Below are positions 34,323 to 64,000 of a DNA stretch of 64,000 bases, piece after piece. The stretch's first letter is position 1; the number at the start of each line of letters is the position of its first letter. Location: the NCBI RefSeq assembly GCF_006345805.1, contig NC_043015.1:42532001-42596000 (forward strand), written 5' to 3'. The notes beneath the pieces are model-generated. The model saw only the letters and a list, made by a program, of their open reading frames with translations, searched no databases and was not told where the DNA came from. A program made the position numbers and the translations under genes. The DNA is from Octopus sinensis. Taxonomy: Eukaryota.

Positions 34323-34360
<38 letters not shown>

Positions 34361-36033: not shown

Positions 36034-36929
36034 TTATGACATACACAAGCTTATATCATTTGTTCCTTATATTTTACCATTGTGGTTATTTACACCCTCT
36101 GCAGTGGATGTTCCAAATGCAATAGGGTGCATAACCACAATAGTTCTTCAGGGTATGCGTGTATATATATATATATAAGGTATAAGTTAGAGGTGTTAAG
36201 CCCTCTAAGGGATAGATGTATCCAGTGGCACTCCTGGTAATTACCTCAGTAAGTATGGTCCTTGGTATAAGGTATACGGCAGCAGGTAATTTAAGAGGTA
36301 AACTAGTTTAATGTATATATAGACGATAAGAAAATGGGGGAAAACAGCAAATAAAAGTGTGTCTGGTGCTAAAAAGCCATTATTTAAGTAAATAAGCAAG
36401 GTGAGGGTAAGAGTGACTTTACAGCTGTTTCTGTGTACCATAGTTGCAAATGGTAGACGTCTTCAGAATGAAAAAAGGCAGAGATAGACAAAGAGGAGAA
36501 CAGAGTGAAAGATAGAGGGTGAAATCGGAAAAGAAAATGTTCAGTGATTCAAAAGTCTTACATTTTAGTTGTGCTCAAAGTTCATTAAATTCATTGTGAA
36601 GTAGTTGAAGAATAAAGGATGGTTGAATCCGAAGTCTCGTAGTTCAGTTAGTTATTAGCATGACTTCCATGTGACTGCCGGTGTAATCTGAGGGAAGTTA
36701 TCTCTAATTAGGGATATCCGGTGTGGTTAATAGGAGCTATTGTGGGTAGTTCGTATATATTTGCAGAGGCTGCTGTAAATGAGGGTAAAGTTTATATGTA
36801 GCAGGGGTGCGATTAAAAGCGTAAAGACAAAGTAGTGGAAGAATATTTTGGCTTGAGGAGTGCAATGAAAAAGTAAAGAAAAAGATAGAGGAGGAAATTT
36901 GATGTGTAAGAGAGTTGTGTGTGGGTGTA

Positions 36930-38212
36930 CAGGGTGAGGAAGCAAAATTTACAATATTTTGAGGCAGGGATTGAAAGACAGTGTATGACCAATTGTTTTA
37001 TTGAAAGTTATGAGAATTTATTTGCCGCAAGAAAATTTACATAATAGAAAATGTTTTTATTCCATGTGTCCTCCTTCTTTCTCAATAACTGCCTTCACAC
37101 CCTTCCTGAAACTTGTACAAGTGTTCCTCAAATATTCGGGAGACAACTTCTCCCATTCTTCTGTAATAGTATCTTTAAGAGAGTCGACATTGCTGTGTGA
37201 TGTTAGCATGTTCTAAAACGCCCCAAATAGCATAATCCAGAGGGTTTAGATCTGGGCTAGAAGGTGGCCTTAAACATGATTCCCAGAAATCGCTAAAGTT
37301 GGATTTGCAGAAATCTTGTATTTTTCTGGCTGTGTGGGCTGGAGCACCATCCTGTGTCCATACATAATTACCATCTGGGTAGTTTGCTTTAAGCCATGGC
37401 AATACCTGGTATCTCAGAGTCTTGTAGTAAGTATTAACATTGATCTTTTCATCAGCTTTGTAGAATTTTATTGGCATTTTCTTTCCATCGGAAGCCACAA
37501 CACCAAAAGCCATAACTTGTGCAGGATGTTTTGTTTTGAATGTTCCCTTAACCTCAGCTGTTGGTTTTGCAATAAATCTGTCATTTCTGCGGTTCAGAAC
37601 AGCATCGACACTGAAGATCTTTTCATCTGTAAAGATTGTTACAATGGAGGACTTTTTCTTGAACCATGTAATAATTTTTTGGCACCTTTCCAATCTCTTT
37701 TACCTTCATAGCTGTTGTCAACAAGTGTTTTGGTGTTCTTGTGTAAGATTTTAACCTCAAATCATATTTTACTGCATTTCTAATGGTCTTCTTGTCTACC
37801 TCAAGTTCAATTGCCATTTTTCTCATGGATTTGGTTGGATCCTTTAGGATTTTGGATTTGAGAGCTTTAATAAAAGCTTTGGTACGTTTTTTGTTGATTC
37901 CTCCACTTCCAGACTTCCTCGTAATAGTTTTGCTCATAGTCATTCTATTCTTTACATTATAAACAGTCTTTATGGACACTCCAACTATCCTTGAAATCTC
38001 CTTTTGTGTGACGAGTGCATTCAGCAAATCACACACTCTTGGACGTTTGCTTTCCTGATTACTCATATGGGCAAAAGTTTCTGAAAAGGTAAGGATAATA
38101 GTGTTAGGTATGAGTATGACATCAGTATATGCTAGGTTTCAAAACAATTGACTTAGTGCCTCCTGAGAAAAAGCAACTTAACGTTCATTGTAAATTTTGC
38201 TTCCTCACCCCG
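36930..38212 (-). mobile_element. maT (DD37D) Tc1/mariner transposon, full length, frameshifted
   Basis: 26 bp TIRs CAGGGTGAGGAAGCAAAATTTACAAT (36930-36955 and 38187-38212, 1 mismatch), TA on both sides. Transposase 38066-37057 with FTDEK, QDGAPAH, SPDLNPLDY; 37 residues between the last two Asp; two frameshifts. Confidence 0.92.
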
Positions 38213-38214
38213 TA

Positions 38215-38792
38215 TATACGTGTATCCGTGGGGTTGTGAGTATTAGGTGTGTGCATGTGTGTGTGTCTGTGTCTATATGTATATACGTATGTGTGTGTGC
38301 GCGTGTAGGCATATATTGTGTGTATGTATATGCATAAGTGTGTGTGGGGGAGGGTTGGAGTTGTGTAGGCGTAATGTGCAGCGTGTGTCTGCCCATGTGT
38401 GTATAATTGTTTGCGTATCTATGAGTATTGTTTGTTGTAGGTAAATGTGGGAATCTGCTGGTGTGTGTGTGTGTGTGTGAACGTGGAGATGTGTGTCAGG
38501 CTGTGTTTATTTTGTGTATGTACGTGTGCTTGAGTATGTGCGTGTATGTGGTTGTGTGTCTAAGGTGTGTGGGGTTGGGTGGGATAGGTTTCTGTGTATT
38601 CCTCTGTGGGTGTGTGTGGAAGTATGTATGTATGTATGTGTTCATGTATAAAAACAATAAATTATAAGCAATAAAAAAACAAAAATTATAAAAGGAAGTT
38701 GATCCAATACAAAAGACGTTGTTGATTCGTTTTGTTATTACTGTTTTCATGGTGGAAAATCTTCCATCATAACCTGTGGATGAACTCGTTAA

Positions 38793-38860
<68 letters not shown>
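38215..38860. repeat. GT-rich low-complexity tract followed by a long (TA)n microsatellite
   Basis: Degenerate (GT)n at 38215-38660; (TA)n at about 38780-38858. Confidence 0.9.
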
Positions 38861-38861
<1 letters not shown>

Positions 38862-38876
38862 CTATCATGGTTGTTT

Positions 38877-39660
38877 TATAGGACGTTACATTCTGAATTA
38901 GGCCTCTGCTACCTTCTTTCATGGGAGATAGAGCCTGTGGACATCTGATTTTGGGTGGTGCATCCTGTTTAGTGTCAGCAGTTTCCTGGTCCTTATGTCC
39001 TTATGCTGGAGATCACTCAGATTCCAGTTGATGACATTAAGGCTATACTTGACAATTGGTACTGCCAGGGAGTTTATAGCTGCTATTCTATTCTGAGAGT
39101 TCAGCTCAGTATTGCTCAGTATTCAGGATCATTCTCATACGTCTATAATACTCTTTCCTGATCTTTTCTTTCATTGATCTGTGTTGAATCCGTTTCCCTT
39201 TGTGTATCCCACGATACTTATAGAAGCCTTCTCAGTCCAGGTCCTTGATAGATGTATCACGATTAAGTCGGGCTGTAGTATTAACTGTCAGTTCACCATG
39301 TTTGAGTGAAGCTTTTACACATCTGTCAAGGGCCAATTCCATAGAGATGTCATCACTGAATTTTTTTCACAGTTTCTCGTAGCCCTTTCAGATCCTTGTC
39401 AGCTTTTGCATATAACTTCAGATTGTCCATGTAAAGCAAGTGTGGGATGATCTTGTCAAACATTTTGTGACAGTAGCTTGTTACATTCAACTTGTGGGAC
39501 TGGGGAATGAGAGAAAGGGTAGAGTGGATTGCCCTGGAATATTTCACAATCTATTTTAATGTTCTCTGACAAATACGTGCCGTTTTTGTGGTTGAGAAAT
39601 AATCTTGTGTTCCATAGTCCCATCCTGTGCTGTAGAAAACCTTTTATGAAAGGAGAGATC
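38877..39660 (-). mobile_element. degenerate R4/Dong-like non-LTR RT fragment
   Basis: Across frames: HLLYMDNLKLYAK, MKEKIRKEYYRR, INSLAVP, TRKLLTLNRMHHPKSDV, RLYLP. Confidence 0.8.
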
Positions 39661-39689
39661 TTGTATATTTATTATTTATTTTCCATTGG

Positions 39690-41640
39690 TTGCTGTGCTA
39701 ACCAGTTTAGGATTATCTTTGTGAACAACTTGTATACATGGGACGAGGCATATGGGACAATAGTTTTCCACATGAGCCATCTTTCCATATCGCAAAGACC
39801 ACACTTTCCACAGCTGTTGGTGTAAGGCCTCCACTTGGCCAAGATCTTCCAGTGAATCTTATAGCCAACGCCCTATTCTTTTAAGGACTATATATAACTG
39901 GATAATTTGGTTATTTTCCTTTTATCCCAGTGTCTGAAGTTTAAGGTGTGATAGTTGAACTTGGCTTTAAAATTTCCCTCTGCGGGACCCACATATTTCT
40001 GTGACAAAACTACGTCCTTAGTGGTTGTAGAGTCTACGGTGGCTTCGTAAATGATGGCCTCGGTCATACAAGCTCCATTTAGCGGGCACAAATTTTTAAC
40101 TCTGCAGGAACAGTCGGTTTCATTTTGTTTTTGTTTGTTGTGTGCAATTAAAGTTAGTATTTAAAAAATTTTTTAAGTTGTGCCTATTAAAGATCTTTCT
40201 ATAATTATGATTGATTGGAAAATATCTATCTATAAGTGATAAGAAATGTCTATCTATATTAAAGGTCATTTCGGCGGAGTAAGGTGGTGTGAACCAGATA
40301 ATTTTCCTATTCCTATTTTTCCTTTTCTTTGTTACAGGACTAATAACAGGTGTATAAGTTATTTCCTCCCTAGAACCACTATCTTTTAGGGCTTTGTTAT
40401 ATATTGGGGCAACACTATAAAAATGTTTATATCGGAGGAATTCTCTTGCTTATGTTTTCAACTAAATTCTTGGGAACACTATGGTGGGGGGATGGCAGGA
40501 ACCTACATTAATATAGCTAAGTCTATCGTTGGGTTTTCTATAGGGTTTATAAATATTCTTATTTAAATCTAAAGATACATCTAGGACATTGTCAAGCTTC
40601 AGGTTGGTATCTCTTGTTATGCTAAGATCGAATGTTTTCATTATTTGGATAATGTCCTTCGTAAACTGATCTTGTGCTGCTCCAACTAATTGTCACATAT
40701 TATATTTATAGATAAATTCCTCTATTTTACATAATATTGAGATCTCATTCTTTTATTGCCATATTATTATTAATCACCATCATTATCGTTTTTTATATAT
40801 ACTAGATTAGAATTTTGTTTTACATAAGGTTCATGAAGTCCATTCAGTATTGAGGTTTCAATTAACATCTAGGTAATTAACAGAGTAATTCTCATTTTCA
40901 ATAGTGATTGATAATCCGAAACCCTTAAAAGATTTGTGCAGTTGTTTCTTGTGTATTTCCAGACTTCTGCTAGATATGTTCTTAACTAAAAACAAAGCGT
41001 TGTCTCTATAGAAGCCGCCATTCAATTTAGGAAATTCTCTACTTAGATTATCTAATAAATAAATCCCTTCTAAATCGGTCGTTTCTGCTGAATCTGGCGA
41101 ACCCATTGTAATATCAAACAAAACGGGCGTATCCTTCCTAGCCCATAATTTATTATTGAATTCTATAACCGTTTTTCTTGCTGCCAAAATAACCTTAATT
41201 TCTTTCATGCTAATGTTGGTGTGTCTTCTAGCAAAAATTAAAGCTTGGTTAAGAATTATAGGATTAATAGATGAGTAATAATTTTAGATATCGAATTGGA
41301 TAAATTTATGGTTACTACCGTTATTTACCTTAATACCTGAGAATCAATCCAATGCATCCTGTGTATTTTTCCATAGATTGAGCTTTATTTTATTTCTAAT
41401 AATGGGTAAATATTTATCAAGGATTAATTTACTTAATTTACCTAAGTCTGATTTACGAGGACAGATTAATCTAACTTGCGTATTATTAGGGAAATTATCT
41501 TTATGGTCCTTAATCGCTTTTTTGCAACCCTTGTCTGAGCTTAATTCTTGGATATTCAATTTGAAGTCCTCATTAAAGGTTGTTCTGTAAAAACTTGGCT
41601 TGAGAATTCTCTGAGTTCAGTAAACACATATTTGGCCAAA
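39690..41640 (-). mobile_element. degenerate Penelope-like element (RT followed by GIY-YIG endonuclease)
   Basis: VRLICPRKSDLGKLSK, FDITMGSPDSAE, YRDNAL, NYLDV, CPLNGAC...IIYEATV...YVG, IHWKILAK...CGKCGLC. Many stops and frameshifts. Confidence 0.85.
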
Positions 41641-41709
41641 TAATGGCTTATAAATGCCCAATAGTCAGTCACTTTGTGGTCCCCCTAAAATCGCTTTGCA
41701 GTTCCCTAG

Positions 41710-42110
41710 AGGACCGTGGACTCCAGTTTGAGATCCTATTATTAAAGGAGGAAATGATGGTGGCTAAATTGTGAGTAAGGCTATACCCTATTCTAATAGT
41801 TTTATTGTTAATTATTTGACAAAATTTATTCTTACCCTTCACAAAGTGCTTGTACAATAAATTATGGATTATTCTAACTATATCCGTTTTAATTTGCATT
41901 GCATATGGGATTATCAGCCATAGTGCATCATTATCACTATGTGGGTTACCTATCAAATTCGTATTGTCGGCAAAAACTCTGTTCCTCTTCCAACCCATAT
42001 GCCCTCTACGATTAATATTACCAAGATTATGACTAAAATCATTGTTAAAATTGGTTTTATTATTATTATTACAGTGTAAATAAGTTTTTCTGTTATCGTA
42101 GATAATATCA
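41710..42110 (-). mobile_element. second, diverged Penelope-like fragment (RT-EN linker)
   Basis: LWLIIPYAMQIKTDIVRIIHNLLYKHF...IRIGYSLTHNLATIISSFNNRI parallels the linker of the first copy at about 40150-40350. Confidence 0.6.
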
Positions 42111-45100
42111 TTATTAGATAGTAGGTGCAATTTGAAAGAGATTTAACTGCTCTTTCTTTCATGCCAAATGAGTTCTCAAAGAACCCATTGCTCACTTGTA
42201 ATCTTCTTTGGTTAATGTTCATACTAATGCTTATATTCTGAGCTTATCCACTGAAGAAGACGATGATGATGATCACCGCACTTTAGATTAAGACAGTGAA
42301 AATGTTACCTGTATGTGCAACTTTATAATTGCCATTGTGATAAAAGATCTATCATATTCAAAGGTAAAACCTTCTGTCTAGACATTTCGGAGAGAAAGAG
42401 TGGACAGGTTTCCATTTTGTGTTATTTTATAGTTGCCTTTTGCGATAACAAGGTCTGTCATATAAGAGTATCTAAATGTCTTCTCTGAAGACATTTTAGA
42501 GAAAAGAAGTGGAAATGTCATTCATGTGCCCAACTTCATAATTATTGCCATTGTTGTAACAAGATCGATCGTGTTCAGATTTCTGAAGTCTATTTCTCCA
42601 GGTTGTGAGGCTTGTTTATGGCACATTTTTTTTTTGTTTTTTGTGTATATGGATGAAGTCTGGTCTTGCAATCCATTGCCCTCTGAGGGGCCCCTGTTGG
42701 GTGCAAGAGATACATTGTCTCAGATATCCAGGGGTGACGGGACAGTGTCGTATCTTTCATGCTGTTATTTGGGGTGGTATTTCTAATCAATATTGTAACA
42801 AATAAGAATCATCTTCTACGGGCCTTGCACCTTGAGTGTGCTTAATGGAGATTTTCATGTAAAGTGTAACCCCAAATACAATGCAAGCCCTAACATGGTG
42901 ACTAGGCAAGGATTAGGGACACCAAGTTCCGCCTGTGTAACTTGCAACAAACTCCCACAGACTCAGAGGTTACACTGGCCGATGGAGGCCATGGGTGGCA
43001 CCAATTTCCATAGCTGTTCACATGAACAGCTGCTTACAGAATGATATTATCTGCTATGTCCTTCCTTTTAGATGTCATATGCTATTTGAAAGAGATTTAA
43101 CTGCTCTTTCTTTCATGCCCAGTGGATTCCCAGAGAATTCAGTACTAACTTGTGATTTGGTGTGGGTAATGCTCGTACTAATGTTCATACGCTGAACTTA
43201 TCCACTGAAGATGATGATGATTTAGTAACAATCATCATCACACTTTGGAGAAAAAGAGTAGAAACGATACTGGCGATAACCAACAGACTTGTTGCCATTG
43301 TGGTAAAGGTTATTTCTTGTTCAAAGTAGAATCTTCTGAGACCCTTTGGATAATAAATGTTGAAATGTTAACTATTGCCATAAAAAACATCATTACACTT
43401 TGGACAAAAATAGTAGAAATGTTTCCCGTAGAACTAACTTTCTAATTGCCATTGTGGTAAAGGTTCTTTCTCATTCAAAGTAGAATCTTCTGAGATCCTT
43501 TGGATAATTAAAGTTGAAATGTTATCCATATGCCTAATTGCATAATTATTGCCAGTAAAAGGACCGTGACCGGGTGGAGTCTAGTCTTGTGCTCCATTCG
43601 GCGCCCTGTATAACTTGCTGCAAGTCTCCCACAGATGCTGAAATTTCACAGACCTATGCAGGGCATGGATGTCGCCAATTCCCTGAGATGTTCATACGGA
43701 CATCCAAATACAGAACGCCATCTAATGTGTCCTTTTTTGTAGATGTTAGGTGCGACTTGAAAGATATTCTGAGTTCTCAGAATCTGTTGGTCAGTTGTAA
43801 TCTTTGGTTAATGTTTGTACTATTGTTCATATGCTGAGCTTATCCACGAAAGAAGAATACAGGTGAGCAACAATCACCGTCATACTTCAGGTAAAGAGAG
43901 TGCAAAAGTTACCTGTATAATGTTCCAAGCAGAATCATTTGTTAATAAACACTCGGAAAAAACATGCTAATGTTACCGGTGTGTCTAATTTCACAATTAT
44001 TGCAATTGTGGTAACAAGAACTTTCACATGCTGTTGTTGTAATAAAACTTATCATATTACAAGTCGTACCTTCTGTCGAGACTCATCAGGTAAAAAAAAA
44101 AGTGGAAAATGTTTCCCTTGTGCCCAACTTCATAACTTTTGCCATTTTGGTAAGAAGATCCTTTATGTCACGAGTCAAATCTTCTGGCAGGATGCTTCGG
44201 ATGAAAAGAATGGATGTCCCTGCTCCAGACTCAAAGTCTTGTTAAACAGCACTTCAATACCTTTTTGGTTATATCGACAGAAGATTACAACTCAGCAACA
44301 ATCATCATCACTTTTTGGATGGAAAGAGTGGATATGTTACCACTATGCCTTACTTTACAGTTGCCATTATGGTAAGATTTATCATATTTATACTTTATTC
44401 TTTTGTCAAGATATTTAGGATGAAAAAAAGTGGATAGGAATATCTTGCTCCCGGCATGTGATTATTACCATTGGATAATGCTCGTACTAATGTTCATAGG
44501 CGGAACTTATCCACTGAAGATGATGATGATTTAGTAAAAATCATCATCACACTTTGGAGAAAAAGAGTAGAAATGTTCAGATAACCAACAGACCTATTGC
44601 CATTGTGGTAAAGATTCTTTCTCGTTCAAAGTAGAATCTTCTGAGACCCTTTGGATAATCAATGTTGAAATGTTATCCGTATACCTAATTGCATAATTAT
44701 TGCCATTATGATGGCAACACCTATCACATGCCTTTGTGCTAAGAAGACCTATTGTATTAAATGTTGAATCTTCTGTCTAAGATATTTTGGATAAAAAGAC
44801 TCAAATAATCAGACTTTTGCTGATGTAGGTATATAATAGAATTACTGATTAAAAAGCTATGGGCCTATTTGTGGAAACGTTACACATATACCTAACTAGA
44901 TAACTATTGCCATTGTGGCAACAGGATCTATATATTCAAAGTGGAATCTTCTGTCAAGGCACTTTGGATGAAAAGAGTAGAATTGTTCCCATTATGTGTA
45001 ACTTTATAATTGCTTTTGTTGTAACAAATTCTTTGGATAAAAAGAGTGGAAACGTTTCCACTTTGTGTCACTTTGTAATTGCTTTTGTTGTAACAAGTTC

Positions 45101-53124: not shown

Positions 53125-53160
53125 TGCAAAAACAAATTCGTTGTTGATATTTCCATATAT

Positions 53161-54027: not shown

Positions 54028-54035
54028 TATTGGCC

Positions 54036-54259
54036 TACCCCTCCTTAGCGACTTCAATAAACGTCAGTCAAATAATATACTTCTGATTGCAGCCTTTGCG
54101 ATTACACCCCTAGCAAACATTATTCGCTGCCAATTTCTGTATCATTTGGTGCCCTTTTTTAGACTTCTTACTGCTAGGTATAATACCCTTTGCTGCCAGG
54201 AAAGACGCAGCATCTTCCTCCGATTTCATGGTAACAAACAATTCGCCTAGACTAGCCAT
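54036..54259 (-). mobile_element. Merlin/ISXO2-like transposase N-terminal fragment
   Basis: MASLGELFVTMKSEEDAASFLAAKGIIPSSKKSKKGHQM...C*GCNRKGCNQKYII*LTFIE resembles the Zn-ribbon start of Merlin transposases (E-x-x-A-x-x-FL..GI..C..GH.M..W.C....C....IR..TF.E). Two stops. Confidence 0.55.
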
Positions 54260-57200
54260 TTTAAACAACGAATTTAGCAACGAATTTTACATAACAAGTA
54301 AGCAAAACACAGGCTTTAACTTTAAAATTTTATACAAAACGAATAACTTAGCTGTTTTACGAAGCAAAACACAGGCTTTCCAAACGAATTTTACGTAACA
54401 AGTAAACCACAAAGAATAATATTTTATACAAAACTAATAAATTAAAAATTTTATAAAGCAATATATACCCATGCTTTCCGACTCACTCTTAGCTGTTACG
54501 TACTACGTCACAAAATAGCTGTCTACGTCACAGTAACAGTATGTTTAGACGCATAAAAATGATTTCAGCTCAAAACAGAGAATGCGATTGGTTAAAATTC
54601 GAAGAACTAAACAACGTAAAACTTACAAAATACAATTTTCTCAAAAAAGCCAAGTGAAATTAATGTTTTCTTTTGACACATTCTACCAGTATACGAAGTT
54701 TCAAATTCTTTAGTTAACTAGAAAATTCCGTCCACCAAAAGGAAAAGATCCCCCATATCCCGATATGATAAGGAAAGGTATCTAGAGATGGGATATGGCC
54801 TAAAGCACCATTCGGAGATGAGCCATAAAAAGCATTTCCCCAACATAGTTATAATGGCGTGGCTATGTTATTACATGCACAGCCTAATTTGTGATAAAAG
54901 ATCTATCATATTCAAAGGTAAAACCTTCTGTCTAGACATTTCGGAGAGAAAGAGTGGACAGGTTTCCATTTTGTGTTATTTTATAGTTGCCTTTTGCGAT
55001 AAGAAGGTCTGTCATATAAGAGTATCTAAATGTCTTCTCTGAAGACATTTTAGAGAAACAAAGTTGAAATGTCATTCATGTGCCCAACTTCATAATTATT
55101 GCCATTGTTGTAACAAGATCCATCATGTTCAGATTTCTGAAGTCTATTTCTCCAGGTTGTGAGGCTTGTTTATGGCACATTTTTTTTGTTGTTTTTTGTA
55201 TATATGGATGAAGTTTGGTCTTGCTATCCGTTGCCCTCTGAGGGGCCTCTGTTGGGTGCAAGAGATATATTGTCTCAGATATCCAGGGGTGATGGGACAG
55301 TGTCGTATCTTTCATGCTGTTATTTGGGGTGGTATTTCTAATCATTATCGTAACAAATAAGAATCATCTTCTACAGGCCTTGCACCTTGAGTGTGCTTAA
55401 TGGAGATTTTCATATAAAGTGTGACCCCAAATACAATACCAGCTCTAACATGGTGACTAGGCAAGGATTAGGGACACCAAGTTCCGCCTGTGTAACTTGC
55501 AACAAACTCCCACAGACTCAGAGGTTACACTGGCCGATGGAGGCCATGGGTGGCACCAATTTTCATAGCTGTTCACATGAACAGCTGCATACAGAATGAC
55601 ATTATCTGCTATGTCCTTCCTTTTAGATGTCATGTGGATTTGAAAGAGATTTAACTGCTCTTTCTTTCATACCCAGTGGATTCTCACAGAATTCATTACT
55701 AACTTGTGATTTGGTTTGGGTAATGCTCATACTAATGTTCATACGCTGAACTTATCCACTGAAGATGATGATGATTTAGTAACAATCATCATCACACTTT
55801 GGAGAAAAAGAGTAGAGACGATACTGGCGATAACCAACAGACTTGTTGCCATTGTGGTAAAGGTTATTTCTTGTTCAAAGTAGAATCTTCTGAGACCCTT
55901 TGGATAATAAATGTTGAAATGTTAACTATTGCCATAAAAAACATCATTACACTTTGGGCAAAAAGAGTAGAAATGTTTCCCGTAGAACTAACTTTCTAAT
56001 TGCCATTGTGGTAAAGGTTATTTCTCGTTCAAAGTAGAATCTTCTGAGACCCTTTGGATAATAAAAGTTGAATATTATCCGTATGCCTAATTGCATAATT
56101 ATTGCCTTTATGATAGCAACATCTTTTTGATATCTATTTCTATCAGAAATAAACATTCTGATATCTGTTTCTCCTGACTTGAGTGAGTCACGTTAAATGG
56201 CACTTAAATGTGTTTTTGTTTATAATGACTGACCACTTCCATTTTGTGTATTTTGACCAGTAAAAGGACCATGACCGGGTGGAGTCTAGTCTTGTGCTCC
56301 ATTCGGCACCCTGTATAACTTGCTACAAGTCTCCCACAGATGCTGAAATTTCACTGACCTATGCAGGGCATGGATGTCGCCAATTCCCTGAGATGTTCAT
56401 ACGGACATCCAAATACAGAACGCCATCTAATGTGTCCTTTTTTGTAGATGTTAGGTGCGACTTGAAAGATATTCTGAGTTCTCAGAGAATCTGTTGGTCA
56501 GTTGTAATCTTTGGTTAATGTTCGTACTATTGTTCATATGCTGAGCTTATCCACGAAAGAAGAATACAGGTGAGCAGCAATCACCGTCATACTTCAGGTA
56601 AAGAGGGTGCAAAAGTTACCTGTATAATGTTCCAAGCAGAATCATTTGTTAATAAACACTCGGAAAAAACATGCAAATGTTACCGGTGTGTCTAATTTCA
56701 CAATTATTGCAATTGTGGTAACAAGAACTTTCACATGCTGTTGTTGTAATAAAACTTATCATATTACAAGTCGTACCTTCTGTCGAGACTCTTCAGGTAA
56801 AAAAAAAAAAGTGGAAAATGTTTCCCTTGTGCCCAACTTCATAACTTTTGCCATTTTGGTAAGAAGATCCTTTATGTCACGAGTCAAATCTTCTGGCAGG
56901 ATGCTTTGGATGAAAAGAATGGATGTCCCTGCTCCAGACTCAGTCTTGTTAAACGGCACTTCAATACCTTTTTGGTTATATCGACAGAAGATTACAACTC
57001 AGCAACAATCATCATCATCACTTTTTGGATGAAAAGAGTGGATATGTTACCACTATGCCTTACTTCACAGTTGCCATTATGGTAAGATTTATCATATTTA
57101 CACTTTATTCTTTTGTCAAGATATTTAGGATGAAAAAAGTGGATAGGAATCCCTTGCTCCCAGAATGTGATTATTACCATTGGATAATGCTCGTACTAAT

Positions 57201-57589
57201 GTTCATAGGCGGAACTTATCCACTGAAGATGATGATGATTTAGTAACAATCATCCTCACACTTTGGAGAAAAAGAGTAGAAATGTGTCGGATAACCAACA
57301 AACTTATTGCCATTGTGCTAAGGGTTCTTTCCCGTTCAAAGTAGAATCTTCTGAGACCATTGTGGTAACAAGATCTGCTAGATTCAAAGTCAAATCCCAT
57401 GACCTGATGACATTTAGGAAGCGCCCTTGTTTCCAGTTCAACGATTGGCCATGCACATTTGTGCACCCTACATGTATGCGAGACATCACCTACCTTAAAC
57501 GGTCATCTTTGTTTTTTCGGCTGTTTGTGGGGTGAAATTTCGCCATAAGTCCTCGAACAATGACTCATGTATGACGTGTCGAAGGGTGG

Positions 57590-58170
57590 TGTCACGTCGT
57601 CTAAGGACAATGTCTCTGGGATTGTGCTGTCCACTGCGAAGGAGTACAGCTATGTCATTGCATGTGGGTGCATAGTAGCGGCCTGTATGTTCCCTAGATG
57701 GTCTTTTCTGAGCATTAATGATAGCATTAAAATTTGACCAAGCTTCTGTATCGAAGGCATACTTGAAGCTGCATACAGAGCTGTTTTTCTGGTGCAAAAC
57801 TTCTTGTAGTTGCATTGTCGGGTGAAAGTTAGTGCCAGTTGAAATGGAGTTTCGTAGGGTGGCTTGTTCATGTAAATTGCCCACAAAGTACAGTTGAAAG
57901 AATTGGGGATCTTGATTTTCAGCAGGTTCGAGTGATCCTATCCTATGGTGAATCTGTTCCTGCACTTTGAAAGCAGACACAAACCCGCCTTCTTGAACAG
58001 CATTAGCGCCGAAAGATGTCATTTCTAATGCACAACTGTACTTTCAGATGTTATTGAGGAAATGTTTCGACTCTATAGTTGTGCCAGCATAGATTGACTT
58101 CAACAGCTGTGGTGGATCCTCCAGCTGTGTGGGGTTCACTTTTCCATTTGCGCAACACATAGCAGGAGTT
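57590..58170 (-). mobile_element. Helitron RepHel N-terminal fragment
   Basis: MCCANGKV...LEDPPQLLKS...SKHFLNNI, SFGA, FKVQEQIHHRIGSL, RYYAPTCNDIAVLL, RDIVLRRRD. Confidence 0.85.
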
Positions 58171-58843
58171 GACCAGAGTGTAAAGAGTTTGTGTCTAGGC
58201 CTTTCAGATACGTCCACCATACACATTCTTTTGCCAAGTGGTTGCAGCGTTCACTACCACGTCATTCAGGTTTGCACTTTGCGTGCATAAGTTCTTTTTT
58301 TCTCCTAGTGTTTCAAGTCTAGGAAAATGCTGGTCCATGAAGGAATTTGACCAGCGTTCAACAATAAAATTTCTCAACATTTTTAATGTTGAGAAGAAAA
58401 ATACACAATTTAATTATGGTTGAAACTGCCCCTAGGGGCCAATTCCTCCCTTGGAAAAGCCCTAGTAGTTGAGGTTGTTGTAGTAGTGGTGTTGTTGTTG
58501 GCAGTTATGGTAGACGGCAAAATGATGATGTTGTTGGTGGTGGTGGCAGAGTTGTCTGATTCAGTAGTTGACTGTGAAGCTGTCGTCTGCGTGTTTACAA
58601 TTTTTTGTGTGTCGGTGGCGATGTTAGCGTTCATGCTCACACTTGCACCTGTGTTGCTTCTCCCCTTCTGTCAAGGAGACCAGCGTTCTTTTCAACGACG
58701 ACTTCATGGCTTGAAGTCGCCATCGTCAAAATAAAAATGGCTAAAAAAAGCTGAAGACAGATATACAAAAACGGGAAAACCACCACACAGAGCAGGTTTC
58801 CCGTGCAAACAATTTGTACAACCAAATGAATTAGTTGTTGCAT

Positions 58844-59279
58844 AAGGTTGTTTTCTATTTGTTTTGTGTTTTGCTTGTAACTGTTCTTGTTTTTTTATGT
58901 GCCAAAACGCACTTTGCGATTAAATGTTCTGGACTGCCACAGTTGTAGCATCTTGGCTTTTTCCTTTCTGCTACAACATATAGGCTTTGCCCATTTTCTA
59001 AGTGAATCCTATCAGGTAGGTTCTCGATAGAGGACCCATCAATCTGGATGGTAACCTCTATTGTTTTATCACCCCAATTGTCATTTTCGTACACGGCGAT
59101 TTCTAATATATTTATCGTTTTTAAATGGTAAAATATCGTCGATGTTATCCATTTGGGTGTTATTTCTGTCGGGACATTTTTAATTCTAATTTTGCTCACT
59201 CTTTGTCCTTTGTAATATGGTACTATGATGATTTCATCATTTTGTAAAGTCTCCGTAGAGTGAGCTTTTGCCACTTCCT
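58844..59279 (-). mobile_element. Tx1/L1-like ORF1 C-terminal module with CCHC knuckle, copy A
   Basis: ...RIKNVP...KPRCYNCGSPEHLIAKC (CX2CX4HX4C). Paralogous to copies B-D. Confidence 0.75.
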
Positions 59280-60564
59280 CCTTTTCAAGTCGTACTTGAA
59301 AAAGTTGACGAGAGACTGACCAGAGAGGAATGTGTTTGTTTGTAAGCCTTTCAAACGTGTCCACCACACGCATTCTTTTGCCATAGCTATCAGTGTTACG
59401 AAAACTGTTTTTCCTTCCCATTTAAAGGAAGGTGGCGGAACAATATTCACGATAGACTCGGCCGATAAGCGGGCCCATCCTACACGCAACAACTGCTGTT
59501 CGACGAAGGTCCACAGCTCTGAAATATCTGGACACTGCACGAGTGCGTGCAGAACGGTTTCGTCATTCTGACCGCATCTCGGGCAGGTCGGTCCGGTGGT
59601 TTTTGAACCGTGTCTGTAGCTCTTCTCTCGAACTGGTAGTGCGTCCCGATAGCATTGCCAAGCCTGGGATCTCTGGAAGTTATCCATAGGCCCCGGCCCG
59701 AAAGTTGTCCTGAAAAGGCGGGTTAGGAATTTCTCATCGACACCCAGGTTTGCCCCGAGTGTGTTGTCGGACCTCCCCTCCACTAGTCCTCTATAGAACG
59801 CTTTGATCGTTTGGAAGTTGCACAAATTTGATCCCGGACAGCAGAACTACTGTAGAGCTTGGTGACACTCTCGGTGCCAATTGCCCAGTTTCGGTCTCTT
59901 TTTGATCCATACTTGCAGTTCGGTCAGTAAGACAAGCTGTGGGAAGGCGCGCCTCACAAACGACGCTGACACCTGTTCACCGTTGTCGATGAAGTTCCAG
60001 AGATGCCGCAGTCTCAGCACATGCCTGCGCATCATTAGCCACGGCATGCCCAGTCCTCCATTTAACGGATGTTGACAGCAAATGGATCGCTTCACCATCG
60101 GAACGCCACCCTTCCACAGAAAGTGGAAGAATATGTGTTCTAGTTTCATGATGGTAGCATCGGAACAAGGCACGACAGTCAGGCGGTAATCGATGACGGA
60201 TGCGATATACACATTAGCCACCTCCACCCGATCTTTTAGAGACAGCTTTCTCTCGGCCCATGTTTGGCTGAGAGCGACCACTCTACTCGCAATCTCGTCC
60301 CAGTTCTTATCCATTTGGCGGTCTGGACTGAACCAGACCCTGAGCAATTTAACCGGTCCGTCCGTTCAGCGTCCCACTACTGAGTTGCTGTTGGACGGTA
60401 AGGGCTTGCTTCTCCAGGTGCCGAGTAGCAAAAACACTGACTTCTTTGGGTTAATTTTCGCTCCCGTCACCGTTTCGTATTCTTTTAGTGTCTCGCCTAG
60501 CATCACGATGTGCTTTCCACTCGACACTATGATGGTGACATCGTCCGCATATGCCGTCACGCAT
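59280..60564 (-). mobile_element. Tx1/L1-clade RT 3' fragment (YADD to C-terminal zinc finger)
   Basis: TAYADDVTI, GAKINPKKS, KLSLKDRVEVAN, FLWKG, GGLGMP, WQCYRDALPV...CPRCG...ETVLHALVQC. Frameshifted. Confidence 0.88.
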
Positions 60565-61058
60565 CTGTTGTGGGTTTGGTGGTGTTGGTAGCAAAGGTTG
60601 TTTTCTATTTGTTTTGTGTTTTGCTTGTAACTGTTCTTGTTTTTTTATGTGCCAAAACGCACTTTGCGATTAAGTGGTCTGGGCTGCCACAGCTGTAACA
60701 TCTTGGCTTTTTCCCTTCTGCTACCACATATAGGCTTTGCCCTTTCTCTAAAAGAATCTTATCAGGAAGTTTCTCTATAGAGGACCCATCAATCTGGATG
60801 CTGACTTCTATCGATTTACCACCCCAATTGTCGTTTTTGTATACGGCAATCTCTAATATGTTTATCGTTTTTAAATGGTAAAATATCGCTCCTGTTATCC
60901 ATTTGTTAGGTATCTCCGGTGGTACATTTTTTATTTTAATTTTACTGATTCTTTTGGTTTCTGTAATAAGGAATCATTATTAGTTCATCATTTTGTAAAT
61001 TTTCTGTCGAGTGGTCTTTTGCTTCTTCCTGATTATGGAAGTGGACCACCACTGTATT
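60565..61058 (-). mobile_element. Tx1/L1-like ORF1 C-terminal module, copy B (frameshifted)
   Basis: Near-identical at the DNA level to about 63475-63950; extra T near 60958. Confidence 0.8.
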
Positions 61059-62353
61059 CGTCACCAACGAAGTAGCAGGTGTCGCTAGTGTTGCTGTGGT
61101 AGAGGCATGCTTGTGCTGCTATTGTCGGGTCTAGTACGCATGGTCGTTTTGCTGGTGAGTCTAATACGTTTTCTAGTTTTCTTTTTATGGCGTATAATGT
61201 TCTTTTTGTTTGGCGAAAGGTGATCAATGTCGTTTGCGTTGAAGCGGTTTGATGGTTTTGGTTTGTTTTTCTCTATACACATTTGGCTGTATGTGTTTGT
61301 GACGTATTTCTCCATGTAGTTTTTCCATATCGTAAGCCACATTAGCGGATTGAGTTCTACTTTTCCCCAATCTTTAAGTTGTGGCATGCTTCTGTGTTTC
61401 GTAGATAAACAGCCGGTTTTTCAGCACCTGTTCTTCTTGTAGCACGACCCTCCATGGGTCTTGACTTGAAGTGGAGAGAGAAGGTGTACGTTTCAAAACT
61501 CTTTCGGCCTGATGTTTTATGTTGATATAAGTGTCAGTGCCTTCTAGTATGCATTTTGCTTCCTCGACGTTGTTTGTGGTAAACCACATTTCGTTGGTGT
61601 ATATGAGTGTTTTGTCTACGCATGACCCGAAGGTGAAGTTGTCTGTCGCTTGACAGCGCATTCGTCTGCATTTCATGAGTCTGTTACGTATGCTTCTTAG
61701 TACATAACTTTTACCGGAGTTACTCGCCCCTGTCAAATGCAACCCGTTAATTTTTGGGTTGATCTTATGACAAACTTCGAACGTATGCCTGCCGAAATCG
61801 TCTGCATCTTTATTGTGGTGTTTCAGCCATCATTCGTATATGTCCAACGATGTTTGTACACTGTGGTAGTTATTTGTATTGTAAGAGAAGAACTGCTTTT
61901 TATCTCTAATCTGTTCCCATATGGGAGTACTTAGAGTCTCGATGTTGGTTTCCGTAGCAGCTGCATTAATGATTATCGTTATATTTGGTGTATTTCTATA
62001 AATGTTGCTCCAGTTATTTCTGTAAGTTGTTTTCGGTGTGTTTTTACAAAATCTTATAATGTCACCCATGTCTGTTGGATTACACTTTTTCATGATTTTT
62101 TCACAAAGTCATACTTGTTCCCTCTGACTGTGTTCGTTTTGCTGATGGACTCGTTATCAGAGTTTTCAGCTGAGGGTAAGTCTTCTGTGTTTATATCTTT
62201 GCACGTTAGCTGTTTAAGCATTGTTTTTTGTTGGTCTGTTTCAAGTTTATCCGCGCATACTACCCATCTGATTTCTTTGTTGTTATTTAGGTATTTGCAA
62301 AATCCGTGCGGCGTAAATATTTTCATAGTTTATGGACTCTTCTATTTTCATTA
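61059..62353 (-). pseudogene. endogenous parvoviral (densovirus-like) NS1 fragment
   Basis: Reconstructed frame 62326-61085 with two slips and one stop: ...SLDIYE*WLKHHNKDADDFGRHTFEVCHKINPKINGLHLTGASNSGKSY (Walker A), DNFTFGSCVDKTLIYTNE (B), EEAKCILEG..INIKHQ (B'), RTPSLSTS (C), NRLFIY, KVELNPLMW. Confidence 0.8.
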
Positions 62354-63380
62354 TGTTTTGCTTGTAACTGTTCTTGTTTTTTTATGTGCCAAAACGCACT
62401 TTGCGATTAAGTGGTCTGGGCTGCCACAGCTGTAACATCGTGGTTTTTTACCTTCTGCTACAACATATAGGCTTTGCCCATTCTCTAAAAGAATCTTATC
62501 AGGTAGTTTCTCGATAGAGGACCCATCGATTTGAAGGGTCACCTCTATCGATTTACCACTCCAATTGTCATTTTTGAACACGGCGATTTCTAAAATATTT
62601 ATTGTTTTTAGGTGATAACATATCGCCGATGTTATCCATTTGGGTGGTATATCTGTTGGGACATTTTTAATTCTAATTTTGCTCACTCTTTGTCCTTTGT
62701 AATACTGAATCATGATGATTTCATCACTTTGTAAAGTCTCTGTAGAGTGAGCTTTTGCCACTTCCTGGTTAGGGAAGTGGACCACCACTGTATTAAACTG
62801 GGGACCCCAGTATAATTTTATATATAATCGTGTGTTTGCTTTTGTTTCATTGTGTTGTGGTGTATGCAATACCAGATCCTGTCCTGAGGTTGTGAAGAGT
62901 GCTCTCGTTTCTATTAACTCTTCATTTGTGAACTTTATAATTTCTTTTTTCTGACGCAGGGTGTCAGCGAAATTCAGTTCTACTCTGGCAGTTGTTGTTA
63001 CCGCAGCAAAATTAGTGTTAGTTGGTGTAGTGTTGGTAGCATTTCCAAGGAACGTTAATTTTGTTTTATTAATATTCACCAGTAATAGGTGAGATATTAA
63101 AATCTTGTGAAATAGCAGGCATATTTATATCAATATCACTGATGTTGTTGTTGTGGCAGTGGAGGTGGTAGTTTTGGTGGTGTTGGTGATGACAGGGCTA
63201 TCAAGAGTTGTGGAAATATCTTTGTGGTCGACAGCAATTTCTTTTTCAAACCTTGTTTTCGACTTTACATTATCAAGCAATTCGTCTCTTCTTCTTTCTG
63301 TCATTCCTAGGCTGGGAAAATCTTCGTCAGAGAATAGTGTTGACCACTGCTCAACAATCAAATTTCTCGACATTTTTAAT
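62354..63380 (-). mobile_element. Tx1/L1-like ORF1 with N-terminal region, copy C
   Basis: ORF 63079-62351 ends KPRCYSCGSPDHLIAKC; an upstream piece MSRNLIVEQW... lies at 63373-63125. Confidence 0.75.
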
Positions 63381-63474
63381 ATCGAGAAATAAAGTTTAAT
63401 ATTAAAAAAGTGATGAAAATGCCCCTAGGGTCGAATTCCACACTGAAAATACCCGTAAAAATACGGGTTTGGTG

Positions 63475-63964
63475 GTATTGGTAGCAAAGGTTGTTTTCTA
63501 TTTGTTTTGTGTTTTGCTTGTAACTGTTCTTGTTTTTTTATGTGCCAAAACGCACTTTGCGATTAAAAGTTCTGGGCTTCCACAGTTGTAGCATCTTGGC
63601 TTTTTGCCTTCTGCTACCACATATAGTCTTTGCCCATTCTCTAAAAGAATCTTATCAGGAAGTTTCTCTATAGAGGACCCATCAATCTGGATGCTGACTT
63701 CTATCGATTTACCACCCCAATTGTCGTTTTTGTATACGGCAATCTCTAATATGTTTATCGTTTTCAAATGGTAACATATCGCTCCTGTTATCCATTTGTT
63801 AGGTATCTCAGGTGGTACATTTTTTATTTTAATTTTACTGACTCTTTGGTTTCTGTAATAAGGAATCATTATTAGTTCATCGTTTTGTAAATTTTCTGTT
63901 GAGTGGGCTTTTGCTTCTTCCTGATTATGGAAGTGGACCACCACTGTATTAAACTGGGGACCCC
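63475..63964 (-). mobile_element. Tx1/L1-like ORF1 C-terminal module, copy D
   Basis: ORF 63989-63498; knuckle His replaced (CYNCGSPELLIAKC). Confidence 0.75.
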
Positions 63965-64000
63965 AGTTTATGGACTCTTCTATTTTCATTATGTTTTGCT

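What the first reader, a model, noticed from the sequence alone, without database searches (positions are those of the whole stretch)
36050..64000. 28 kb gene-free patchwork in which every recognisable mobile or viral coding fragment lies on the same (minus) strand
Seen: maT, R4-like RT, two Penelope pieces, Tc1, CRESS Rep, Merlin, Helitron, four ORF1 modules, Tx1 RT and parvoviral NS1 are all minus-strand. These are about ten unrelated element types, mostly 0.2-1.3 kb pieces fused directly without TSDs. Known: uni-strand piRNA clusters (flamenco in Drosophila; EVE-rich clusters in Aedes) accumulate antisense TE and virus fragments. Inference: this is a candidate cephalopod uni-strand piRNA cluster archiving ssDNA viruses, transcribed from the plus strand. 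An alternative is a concatemer made by RT template switching between sense RNAs.
Basis: partly seen in the sequence, partly recalled or inferred. Interest (0 to 1): 0.82.

Follow-up and report, generated by a model that had tools for sequence, protein, structure and literature searches.

The report
One-strand transposon and virus-fragment graveyard
Just downstream of the octopus DIPK2A gene lies a repeat array and its flanks in which every identifiable transposon or virus-derived coding remnant points the same way; this anatomy fits a one-strand piRNA source locus, but the sequence alone cannot prove that.

Summary
The window is Octopus sinensis chromosome CM016877.1.

**Observation: partly confirmed.**
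- In 36-64 kb, every coding remnant that a database recognises is on the minus strand. These are a mariner/maT-like element, a Tc1-like element, a Helitron N-terminal piece, a CRESS-virus Rep helicase piece, a parvovirus NS1 helicase piece, a LINE RT/zinc-finger piece and five LINE ORF1 pieces.
- The plus strand gave no credible hit, and none of the 129 self-matches is inverted.
- About 41% of the region is not a patchwork. It is a hierarchical direct-repeat array, also found right after DIPK2A in O. bimaculoides.
- The two DNA transposons are whole TIR-bounded insertions, not fused scraps.
- The ORF1 copies are paralogues.
- Penelope, R4/Tx1 and Merlin labels got no database support.
- Independent orientation events number about 5-8 (two-sided p about 0.06-0.008).
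- A new finding: 26 dispersed short repeats fill 1-34 kb and none occurs beyond 34.6 kb, so this is a distinct compartment.

**Interpretation.**
- A plus-strand-transcribed uni-strand piRNA locus is the best single explanation (about 0.4). It is untestable here.
- Chance plus non-independence, or another plus-strand transcription unit, remain live alternatives.
- An RT template-switch concatemer cannot explain the whole region.

The parts
28835..34124 (+). Neighbour: DIPK2A gene. Four coding exons (28835-29521, 30304-30426, 32308-32485, 33778-34121, plus stop), complete inside the window.
   Evidence: PIP49_C hit. O. bimaculoides DIPK2A P0001 is 90% identical. tblastn and splice model give 444 aa.
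34125..34641 (+). DIPK2A 3' flank. This is the last stretch syntenic with O. bimaculoides, and the compartment boundary lies at its end.
   Evidence: blastn L003 15200-15986 = window 34094-34641.
34642..36927 (.). Unclassified sequence absent from the O. bimaculoides ortholog. It is the start of the repeat-poor, TE-fragment-rich compartment.
   Evidence: No match in L003. No Pfam hit on either strand.
36928..38214 (-). Complete mariner/maT-like DNA transposon (1287 bp) with TA-flanked terminal inverted repeats. The transposase frame is shifted at least once.
   Evidence: 28-nt arms, 96% complementary. DDE_3 E 1.5e-5, below Pfam's cut-off. HTH_29 E 0.005. Flanks read.
38215..38870 (.). Simple repeats: CA-rich tracts and (AT)30.
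   Evidence: TRF. Inverted-repeat listing.
38870..39650 (-). LINE-A: C-terminal part of a non-LTR reverse transcriptase (YxDD box to GGRGL-like motif). At least 3 frame changes and at least 1 stop. The clade (R4?) is unverified.
   Evidence: Motif order read from the translation. No database hit.
39700..42142 (-). One colinear Penelope-like stretch (RT-like part, Cys motif, GIY...YVG endonuclease-like part). Several stops (at least 3) and at least 2 frame changes. The identity rests on motifs only.
   Evidence: Motif order. A related piece lies in L003 8152-8325. Pfam, PDB and protein-database searches were negative.
42114..49886 (.). Direct-repeat array, part 1: 2716-bp higher-order unit at 98% identity, built of smaller direct sub-repeats (about 155 bp in places).
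   Evidence: Self-blastn. Homologous array directly after DIPK2A in O. bimaculoides, same orientation.
49887..51487 (-). Complete Tc1-like DNA transposon (1601 bp) with 27-nt terminal inverted repeats and an uninterrupted transposase frame (315 aa from the first ATG). It is inserted in an array unit.
   Evidence: DDE_3 E 8.6e-13, HTH_Tnp_Tc3_2, HTH_38. TIRs. Joined flanks match array unit 55990-56276 at 91% across the junction.
51488..52842 (.). Direct-repeat array, part 2.
   Evidence: 96-97.6% identical to 56135-57361 and 43552-44675.
52843..54888 (.). Non-array block that replaces about 1.6 kb of an array unit. It holds the Rep piece. The claimed Merlin scrap (54176-54244) is unsupported.
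   Evidence: Array homology stops at 52842 and resumes at 54889, out of register. Pfam was negative for the Merlin candidate.
53086..53651 (-). CRESS-DNA-virus Rep fragment: SF3 helicase domain and C-terminus only. At least 1 frame change. No HUH endonuclease domain is present.
   Evidence: Profile A1 finds 7260 relatives. 9 of 10 carry PF02407 Viral_Rep upstream of the matched part. tblastn E down to 1.8e-32.
54889..57361 (.). Direct-repeat array, part 3. It ends abruptly at 57361.
   Evidence: 96% identical to 42335-43553 and 43552-44651.
57498..58250 (-). Helitron transposase N-terminal fragment. No Rep or helicase domain. At least 1 frame change.
   Evidence: Helraiser 7lcc_A residues 192-338, E 1.9e-6. 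Upstream Cys-motif piece located.
58160..58431 (-). LINE-B scraps: an ORF1 N-terminal piece next to an ORF2 C-terminal piece.
   Evidence: tblastn of window pieces against the window.
58844..59322 (-). LINE-B ORF1 copy A (C-terminal RRM-like part plus CCHC knuckle). Frame open.
   Evidence: zf-CCHC. 78-89% identical to the other copies.
59226..60644 (-). LINE-B ORF2 fragment, from the YADD box through the zinc-binding C-terminus. 2 in-frame stops. It is fused at both ends to ORF1 copies.
   Evidence: RVT_1 E 1.4e-4, zf-RVT E 2.5e-5. Junctions read. A related piece lies on the same strand in O. bimaculoides L003 22279-22458.
60572..61065 (-). LINE-B ORF1 copy B. 1 frame change.
61377..61913 (-). 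Parvovirus NS1-like fragment: SF3 helicase domain only. 1 in-frame stop within the matched stretch. The adjoining 61088-62108 is unclassified.
   Evidence: PF01057 Parvo_NS1 E 6.8e-14 and 2.5e-15, 56.6 bits against a cut-off of 20.
62340..63424 (-). LINE-B ORF1 copy C, the only one with its N-terminal part. 1 in-frame stop.
   Evidence: zf-CCHC E 1.8e-5..
63465..64000 (-). LINE-B ORF1 copy D, cut by the end of the window. Frame open.
   Evidence: 96% identical to copy B..

Best explanation
The region is a long-lived trap for mobile-element and virus fragments. It is built around a satellite-like direct-repeat array that has sat immediately 3' of DIPK2A since before O. sinensis and O. bimaculoides split.

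The uniform minus-strand orientation is best explained by the locus being transcribed from the plus strand as one long non-coding precursor. That would make it a flamenco-type uni-strand piRNA source.

Under this model, insertions whose sense strand is antisense to the precursor are kept. They yield antisense small RNAs and do not terminate the precursor. Sense-oriented insertions are lost.

SHOWN
- The element content, its single orientation, and the lack of any inverted self-similarity.
- The array and its conservation in a sister species.
- Two genuine DNA-level insertions.
- Two ssDNA-virus helicase remnants.
- A sharp boundary at about 34.64 kb, beyond which the genome's common dispersed short repeats vanish.

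INFERRED
- Transcription, and its direction.
- piRNA production.
- The orientation filter.
For: - All database-recognisable coding remnants are minus-strand and none is plus-strand.
- 0 of 129 self-matches are inverted, against 112 of 262 in the left part. All 67 protein-level paralogue hits are on the minus strand.
- At least five unrelated element classes are involved. Two of them are independent cut-and-paste insertions with TIRs, one with a demonstrable empty site.
- Two unrelated ssDNA-virus remnants lie within 8.3 kb of each other.
- The left 36 kb of the same window has no mobile-element protein domain at all. It does have 26 copies of two dispersed short-repeat families in both orientations, and these have 0 copies beyond 34.6 kb.
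- The array sits at the orthologous place in O. bimaculoides, in the same orientation. The only LINE piece there is again on the minus strand.
- The O. bimaculoides annotation calls no gene over the 10 kb downstream of DIPK2A.
- From my own knowledge: flamenco lies just downstream of a gene and holds antisense TE fragments. Aedes EVEs are concentrated in piRNA clusters in antisense orientation.
Against: - There are no small-RNA or transcript data of any kind.
- The number of independent orientation events may be as low as 5, which gives p of about 0.06.
  - The ORF1 copies are paralogues.
  - The 34.6-42.1 kb block (maT, LINE-A, Penelope-like) is absent as a whole from O. bimaculoides and could have arrived as one segment.
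  - The 57.4-64 kb LINE/NS1/Helitron block could be one composite.
- 41% of the region is array, whose strand polarity means nothing for this test.
- The window was selected for oddity from a genome-wide scan.
- It is not known whether molluscan piRNA clusters show orientation bias. The main mollusc study read here does not report it.
- Three of the claimed families are not verified.
Confidence: 0.4

Rival explanations
1. Chance plus non-independence. This is an ordinary TE-rich, satellite-associated intergenic stretch. Local direct duplication, one or two composite segments that arrived whole, and a handful of truly independent insertions happen to share a strand.
For: - The array and ORF1 copies are direct duplicates, which keep orientation automatically.
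- The block 34.6-42.1 kb is missing as a unit in O. bimaculoides.
- The block 52843-54888 is a replacement rather than a clean insertion.
- With 5-6 events p is 0.03-0.06, which is unremarkable across tens of thousands of windows.
Against: - It does not explain the total absence of the two dispersed short-repeat families beyond 34.6 kb, where about 22 copies would be expected from the left-hand density.
- It does not explain two rare ssDNA-virus remnants lying close together.
- It does not explain why the single LINE piece in the O. bimaculoides array is also minus-strand.
Confidence: 0.3
2. The region lies inside another plus-strand transcription unit that has nothing to do with piRNAs. Candidates are a very long DIPK2A 3' UTR or read-through, an unannotated lncRNA, or a huge intron of an unannotated gene. 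Sense-oriented insertions would be purged because they bring polyadenylation and splice signals.
For: - The region starts 0.5 kb after the DIPK2A stop codon, on the same strand.
- The plus strand shows a mild G+T excess over the array, similar in size to that over DIPK2A itself.
- Antisense bias of LINEs and LTR elements inside genes is well established in vertebrates (own knowledge).
Against: - DIPK2A is complete within 28.8-34.1 kb.
- No gene is called across the first 10 kb downstream in O. bimaculoides.
- Intronic antisense bias is usually modest (roughly 60:40), not total.
- It does not explain the exclusion of dispersed short repeats, which are plentiful in both orientations inside DIPK2A's own introns.
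Confidence: 0.17
3. The 57.4-64 kb block only is a product of reverse-transcriptase activity. Either LINE-B transcripts, an NS1 mRNA and a Helitron mRNA were joined by template switching, or a target-specific LINE inserted head-to-tail repeatedly and was later deleted internally. Either route gives one orientation for that block.
For: - Five LINE-B ORF1 pieces and one ORF2 piece lie in the same sense.
- Junctions are direct. One ORF1 3' end runs straight into the RT YADD box. The ORF2 C-terminus runs straight into the next ORF1 copy.
- The NS1 piece is flanked on both sides by ORF1 copies.
Against: - No poly(A) tract was seen at the two rounds of junctions read, the 5' and 3' edges of the four ORF1 copies.
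- Junctions lie inside coding sequence rather than at RNA ends.
- No flanking target-site duplication was identified.
- It cannot account for the TIR-bounded maT-like and Tc1-like insertions, the Rep piece or the Penelope-like and LINE-A pieces elsewhere.
Confidence: 0.1
4. Assembly artefact. The mosaic and the 98%-identical 2.7-kb units are products of mis-joined long reads in a repeat-rich region.
For: - The O. bimaculoides ortholog has assembly gaps (N runs) inside the same array, so the region is hard to assemble.
Against: - The window has no N.
- The array exists independently in a second species, in the same place and orientation.
- TIR-bounded elements and an empty-site match are internally consistent.
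Confidence: 0.03

Closest known systems
flamenco-type uni-strand piRNA clusters of Drosophila (see van Lopik et al. 2023, PMC10643416, cited in PMC12479628; details from own knowledge)
   Same: - Gene-free stretch just downstream of a protein-coding gene.
- Packed with fragments of many element families in one orientation.
- Location conserved between species while content turns over.
   Different: - No small-RNA or transcript evidence here.
- The content is DNA transposons, LINEs and ssDNA-virus pieces rather than gypsy-type endogenous retroviruses.
- Nearly half of the locus is a satellite-like array.
- Only 28 kb is visible, and it is cut by the window end.
EVE-rich piRNA clusters of Aedes mosquitoes (own knowledge)
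   Same: - Virus-derived fragments sit among transposon fragments and share their orientation.
   Different: - Aedes EVEs are mostly from RNA viruses.
- Here both pieces are SF3 helicase domains of ssDNA viruses (Parvoviridae NS1-like, CRESS Rep-like).
- Antisense piRNAs are demonstrated in Aedes, not here.
Satellite-repeat piRNA loci (for example the conserved mosquito satellite locus that yields tapiR piRNAs; own knowledge)
   Same: - A conserved tandem-repeat locus as the core of a possible small-RNA source.
   Different: - No evidence that this array is expressed.
- The array is conserved only within Octopus and is absent downstream of DIPK2A in Argonauta hians.
Antisense bias of transposons inside genes
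   Same: - Orientation is opposite to a neighbouring plus-strand gene.
   Different: - The region lies outside the DIPK2A coding exons.
- The bias is total rather than modest.
- Short dispersed repeats are excluded from the region rather than merely biased.
LINE-mediated chimeric retrocopies made by template switching (U6-L1-type chimeras; own knowledge)
   Same: - Same-sense fusion of LINE pieces with a foreign coding piece (NS1), with no sequence in between.
   Different: - No poly(A).
- No flanking duplication.
- Junctions are internal.
- Applies at most to 57.4-64 kb.

Membership tests
Uni-strand (flamenco-type) piRNA cluster | Dense 24-31-nt, 1U-biased small RNAs mapping almost only to one strand. 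| not testable with these tools
   No small-RNA data are available. O. bimaculoides libraries exist (PMC12479628).
Uni-strand (flamenco-type) piRNA cluster | One long precursor transcript from a promoter at one end. | not testable with these tools
   No expression data. Look-ups of window ORFs in public assemblies found nothing.
Uni-strand (flamenco-type) piRNA cluster | Fragments of many element families in one orientation. | tested here: met
   All recognisable pieces are minus-strand, none plus. 0 of 129 self-matches are inverted. Whether that orientation is antisense to transcription is unknown.
Uni-strand (flamenco-type) piRNA cluster | Gene-poor and distinct from the surrounding euchromatic repeat landscape. 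| tested here: met
   No host domain was found in 36-64 kb. 26 dispersed short repeats lie to the left of 34.6 kb and 0 to the right.
Uni-strand (flamenco-type) piRNA cluster | Syntenic position conserved between species, with turnover of content. | tested here: inconclusive
   The array is conserved after DIPK2A in O. bimaculoides, with different insertions. Only 10 kb of that ortholog could be fetched. The array is absent in Argonauta.
Endogenous parvovirus element (NS1-derived) | Significant match to the NS1 family within host DNA. | tested here: met
   PF01057, 56.6 bits against a cut-off of 20, E 2.5e-15. It is embedded between LINE ORF1 copies on an octopus chromosome. Only the helicase domain is present.
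Endogenous CRESS-DNA virus element (Rep-derived) | SF3 helicase related to Reps that carry the HUH Viral_Rep domain. | tested here: met
   9 of 10 top relatives carry PF02407 upstream of the matched part. tblastn E 1e-32.
Endogenous CRESS-DNA virus element (Rep-derived) | HUH endonuclease domain present in the locus. | tested here: not met
   tblastn with 13 full-length relatives aligns only their helicase and C-terminal parts.
Tc1/mariner DNA transposons (both elements) | DDE transposase with N-terminal HTH, terminal inverted repeats, TA target duplication. | tested here: met
   Domains. TIRs of 27-28 nt. TA lies on both sides of the mariner/maT-like element. TA is clear on only one side of the Tc1-like element. 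The subfamily name maT was not tested.
Helitron | Rep (HUH) and Pif1-like helicase domains; 5'-TC...CTRR-3' ends. | tested here: not met
   Only an N-terminal piece matches Helraiser residues 192-338. No Rep or helicase domain hit. It is a fragment of a Helitron gene, not an element.
Penelope-like element | Penelope-type RT followed by a GIY-YIG endonuclease. | tested here: inconclusive
   The motif order is visible by eye. Pfam at E up to 1, PDB sequences and the protein database gave no hit.
Merlin (IS1016-like) transposon | Match to Merlin/IS1595-type transposase. | tested here: not met
   The 58-aa candidate gave only noise at E up to 1.
Template-switch chimeric retrocopy | Same-sense RNA-derived pieces with a 3' poly(A) and one flanking target duplication. 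| tested here: inconclusive
   Same-sense direct fusions are seen. No poly(A) was seen at the two rounds of junctions read, the 5' and 3' edges of the four ORF1 copies. The ends of the block were not defined, because the window ends inside it.

The most novel reading that the evidence does not exclude
This would be the first flamenco-like uni-strand piRNA source described in a cephalopod. It would be anchored on a genus-conserved satellite array next to DIPK2A and transcribed from the plus strand. Alongside transposon fragments, it would store helicase-gene remnants of two ssDNA virus groups (parvovirus-like and CRESS-like) as heritable antisense guides.
Probability: 0.35. Interest if true: 0.7.

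Novelty: new member of a known kind. Interest (0 to 1): 0.45.

Why it matters
- If small RNAs confirm it, this locus would show that orientation-filtered, one-strand piRNA clusters exist in lophotrochozoans. So far they are known mainly from Drosophila somatic follicle cells and, in part, from mosquitoes.
- It would also show that such clusters can archive ssDNA viruses.
- It would give cephalopod biology a concrete, syntenically anchored locus (MFAP1-DIPK2A-array) to study transposon control in a genome famous for transposon expansion.
- If small RNAs do not confirm it, the region is simply a satellite-associated transposon graveyard. The lasting results are then descriptive:
  - two new ssDNA-virus-derived helicase remnants in Octopus;
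  - a Tc1-like element with an open reading frame;
  - a sharp repeat-landscape boundary.

Tried and rejected
- **Frame translations by reference.** The family search refuses translations with stops. I therefore pasted stop-to-stop segments of one frame at a time, with X at stops.
- **Is 36-64 kb an intron of DIPK2A?** Rejected. All four coding exons and the stop lie in 28.8-34.1 kb.
- **CRESS Rep piece.** No hit against PDB sequences, alone or as a profile. The AlphaFold model of the piece was useless (pLDDT 37), so no fold search was run. The piece was resolved instead through the representative search plus Pfam on the hits.
- **Penelope-like piece.** Pfam at E up to 1, the protein database and PDB were all negative.
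- **LINE-B RT and ORF1 against PDB.** Only the CCHC knuckle is recognised. The clade could not be named.
- **Merlin.** No support.
- **Rfam and tRNA scans of the whole window.** Nothing found. The array is not an obvious tRNA or snRNA-derived SINE array.
- **Fetching the O. vulgaris or O. sinensis right-hand region through window ORFs.** No such products are on record.
- **O. bimaculoides 10 kb downstream, Pfam on both strands.** No domain found.
- **Literature.** No paper in the held library describes piRNA clusters or ssDNA-virus EVEs in cephalopods.

Full report
**Source and setting**

- The window is 100% identical to Octopus sinensis GCA_006345805.1, chromosome CM016877.1. The O. vulgaris copy is 97.4% identical.
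- The left 36 kb holds two host genes.
  - An intronless MFAP1 lies at 9707-11020 on the minus strand (Pfam E 2e-73).
  - DIPK2A lies on the plus strand. Its four coding exons and stop codon all fall within 28835-34124. The model is 444 aa with 406 residues identical to the O. bimaculoides protein.
- The finding therefore lies 3' of DIPK2A, not inside it.

**Check of the observation**

Method:
- I translated every stop-to-stop segment of at least 40 aa in each of the six frames of 36050-64000. Frames were kept apart, with X at stops.
- I scanned them against Pfam at E up to 0.01.

Pfam results:
- The minus strand gave these hits:
  - DDE_3, HTH_Tnp_Tc3_2 and HTH_38 at 50.4-51.3 kb
  - DDE_3 at 37.2-37.6 kb, with a weak HTH_29 upstream
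  - Parvo_NS1 at 61.4-61.9 kb (56.6 bits against a cut-off of 20 when tested alone)
  - RVT_1 and zf-RVT at 59.5-60.6 kb
  - zf-CCHC in several ORF1 copies
- The plus strand gave one noise-level hit inside the repeat array.

More sensitive tests:
- The 57.5-58.0 kb piece matches Helraiser residues 192-338 (E 1.9e-6).
- The 53.1-53.65 kb piece had no hit in Pfam or PDB.
  - A profile of it and four relatives found 7260 proteins.
  - Nine of ten tested carry the circovirus/nanovirus-type Viral_Rep domain N-terminal to the part that matches.
  - These proteins align back to the window's minus strand with E down to 1e-32, and only over their helicase and C-terminal parts.
- Both virus-derived pieces are therefore real. 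Both are SF3-helicase-only fragments.

Claims without database support:
- The 'Penelope' stretch (39.70-42.14 kb) is one colinear run. RT-like, Cys-motif and GIY...YVG motifs are visible by eye. No search supports the label.
- The 'R4-like' RT (38.87-39.65 kb) is likewise read from motifs only.
- 'Merlin' has no support.
- The clade names could not be tested.

**Corrections to the description**

*The array.*
- 11.6 kb of the 28 kb is a hierarchical direct-repeat array: 42114-49886, 51488-52842 and 54889-57361.
- It has a 2716-bp higher-order unit repeated at 98% identity. The unit is built from smaller direct sub-repeats, about 155 bp in places.
- It has no protein domain, no Rfam match and no tRNA.

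*The two DNA transposons are whole elements.*
- The mariner/maT-like element (36928-38214) has TA-flanked inverted repeats and at least one frame change.
- The Tc1-like element (49887-51487) has 27-nt inverted repeats and an uninterrupted transposase frame.
- Joining the Tc1-like element's flanks gives a sequence that matches another array unit across the junction at 91%. It is therefore a genuine insertion into the array.

*The ORF1 modules.*
- The ORF1 'modules' are five pieces of one LINE family, here called LINE-B. Four are 85-96% identical C-terminal parts whose edges differ by tens of bases.
- Break counts:
  - Copy C: one in-frame stop.
  - Copy B: one frame change.
  - Copies A and D: open.
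  - The ORF2 piece: two in-frame stops.
  - The NS1 piece: one stop within the matched stretch.
  - The Rep piece: at least one frame change.
  - LINE-A: at least three frame changes and one stop.
  - The Penelope-like stretch: at least three stops and two frame changes.

**Is it more than chance?**

- Inside 36-64 kb none of 129 nucleotide self-matches is inverted. In 1-36 kb 112 of 262 are.
- All 67 protein-level paralogue hits are on the minus strand. Direct duplication produces much of this automatically.
- Counting only events that could have chosen a strand independently gives eight at most: maT-like, LINE-A, Penelope-like, Tc1-like, the Rep block, Helitron piece, LINE-B complex and NS1.
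- The count falls to five or six if the 34.6-42.1 kb block and the 57.4-64 kb block each arrived or formed as one unit.
- The two-sided binomial p is then 0.008 to 0.06. That is suggestive, not decisive, for a window chosen from a genome scan.

**New evidence that the locus is special**

1. The left 36 kb has no mobile-element protein domain on either strand.
   - It does have 16 copies (11 plus, 5 minus) of one dispersed short-repeat family and 10 copies (5 plus, 5 minus) of another.
   - Neither family has a single copy beyond 34.6 kb. About 22 copies would be expected at the left-hand density.
2. In O. bimaculoides (locus L003), synteny runs to 0.5 kb past the DIPK2A stop, which corresponds to window 34641.
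   - About 370 bp later an array begins that matches only the window's 42.1-57.4 kb array, always in the same orientation, to the end of the fetched 10 kb.
   - That stretch also lacks the dispersed short repeats.
   - Its only mobile-element coding piece is a LINE-B ORF2 fragment, again on the minus strand.
3. The 7.5 kb between 34.64 and 42.1 kb (unclassified DNA, maT-like, LINE-A, Penelope-like) is absent there.
4. In Argonauta hians the MFAP1-DIPK2A pair is conserved but the array is not.
5. No gene is called across the downstream 10 kb in O. bimaculoides.

**Mechanism**

- The best single explanation is a long-lived trap locus with a satellite core, transcribed from the plus strand. Retained insertions would then be antisense to the transcript, as in a flamenco-type uni-strand piRNA source.
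- What is shown is anatomy and conservation. Transcription, piRNA production and the orientation filter are inferred. I put this at about 0.4.
- The rivals and their confidences:
  - chance plus non-independence (0.3);
  - another plus-strand transcription unit, such as DIPK2A read-through, a long 3' UTR or an unannotated RNA, that purges sense insertions (0.17);
  - reverse-transcriptase-mediated joining or head-to-tail LINE insertion, for the 57.4-64 kb block only (0.1);
  - misassembly (0.03).
- The template-switch idea fails as a global explanation for three reasons.
  - Two of the elements are TIR-bounded DNA insertions.
  - At the two rounds of junctions I read, the 5' and 3' edges of the four ORF1 copies, there is no poly(A).
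  - Those junctions lie inside coding sequence.

**Comparison with what is known**

- The closest systems are Drosophila flamenco-type clusters and Aedes EVE-rich clusters.
- Three of their structural features are met here: one orientation, many families, and a gene-free distinct compartment.
- Conservation of position is only partly testable.
- The defining small-RNA and precursor features are not testable with these tools.
- In the held library I found no description of piRNA clusters or of parvovirus- or CRESS-derived endogenous elements in cephalopods. Small-RNA data for O. bimaculoides do exist (PMC12479628), so the hypothesis is directly testable by mapping.

**Verdict**

- The strand uniformity is real, and it comes with a striking repeat-landscape boundary and a conserved array.
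- The 'ten fused pieces' picture is overstated.
- The piRNA-cluster reading is plausible but unproven.
- If true, it is a new member of a known kind in a new phylum. If false, it is a satellite-associated transposon graveyard.
- Interest: 0.45.

Noticed in passing
window 1-34640 versus 34641-64000: Two dispersed short-repeat families have 16 copies (11 plus, 5 minus) and 10 copies (5 plus, 5 minus) in the left part and none in the right part. The same families are absent from the O. bimaculoides array stretch (L003 16.3-25.2 kb). This is a sharp change of repeat landscape 0.5 kb after the DIPK2A stop codon.
   Followed up: partly
window 61377-61913 and 53086-53651: Both virus-derived remnants (parvovirus NS1-like and CRESS Rep-like) keep only the SF3 helicase domain. 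Neither has its nuclease domain. Whether that is coincidence is unexplained.
   Followed up: partly
window 49887-51487: The Tc1-like element has an uninterrupted transposase reading frame and well-matched 27-nt terminal inverted repeats. It is inserted in an array unit whose empty form survives at 55990-56276.
   Followed up: yes
window 9707-11020 (minus): MFAP1 is encoded by a single intronless 437-aa frame. The MFAP1(-)/DIPK2A(+) gene pair is syntenic in O. bimaculoides and Argonauta hians. The spacer is 18 kb here against 6 kb in O. bimaculoides, the difference being mostly dispersed short repeats.
   Followed up: partly
window 42114-57361; L003 16355-25230: The array is a hierarchy of direct repeats: an approximately 155-bp tandem motif at 43226-43534, and a 2716-bp higher-order unit at 98% identity. 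It has no inverted component. It is conserved in place within Octopus and absent in Argonauta. Its origin and function are unknown.
   Followed up: partly
L003 16831-17026 and 18345-18638: The O. bimaculoides assembly has runs of N inside the orthologous array. Copy number and order there are not reliable.
   Followed up: no
window about 29690-29900 and 16100-16800: A 42-bp tandem repeat lies in DIPK2A intron 1. A CT-rich low-complexity tandem tract gives long spurious reading frames on both strands.
   Followed up: no
L005 (Logan SRR11869384 contig, 1165 bp): A 234-aa open frame is 79% identical to the window's Rep helicase piece but shares no flanking sequence with it. Related Rep-like sequences therefore exist elsewhere. 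The organism of that run could not be looked up.
   Followed up: partly
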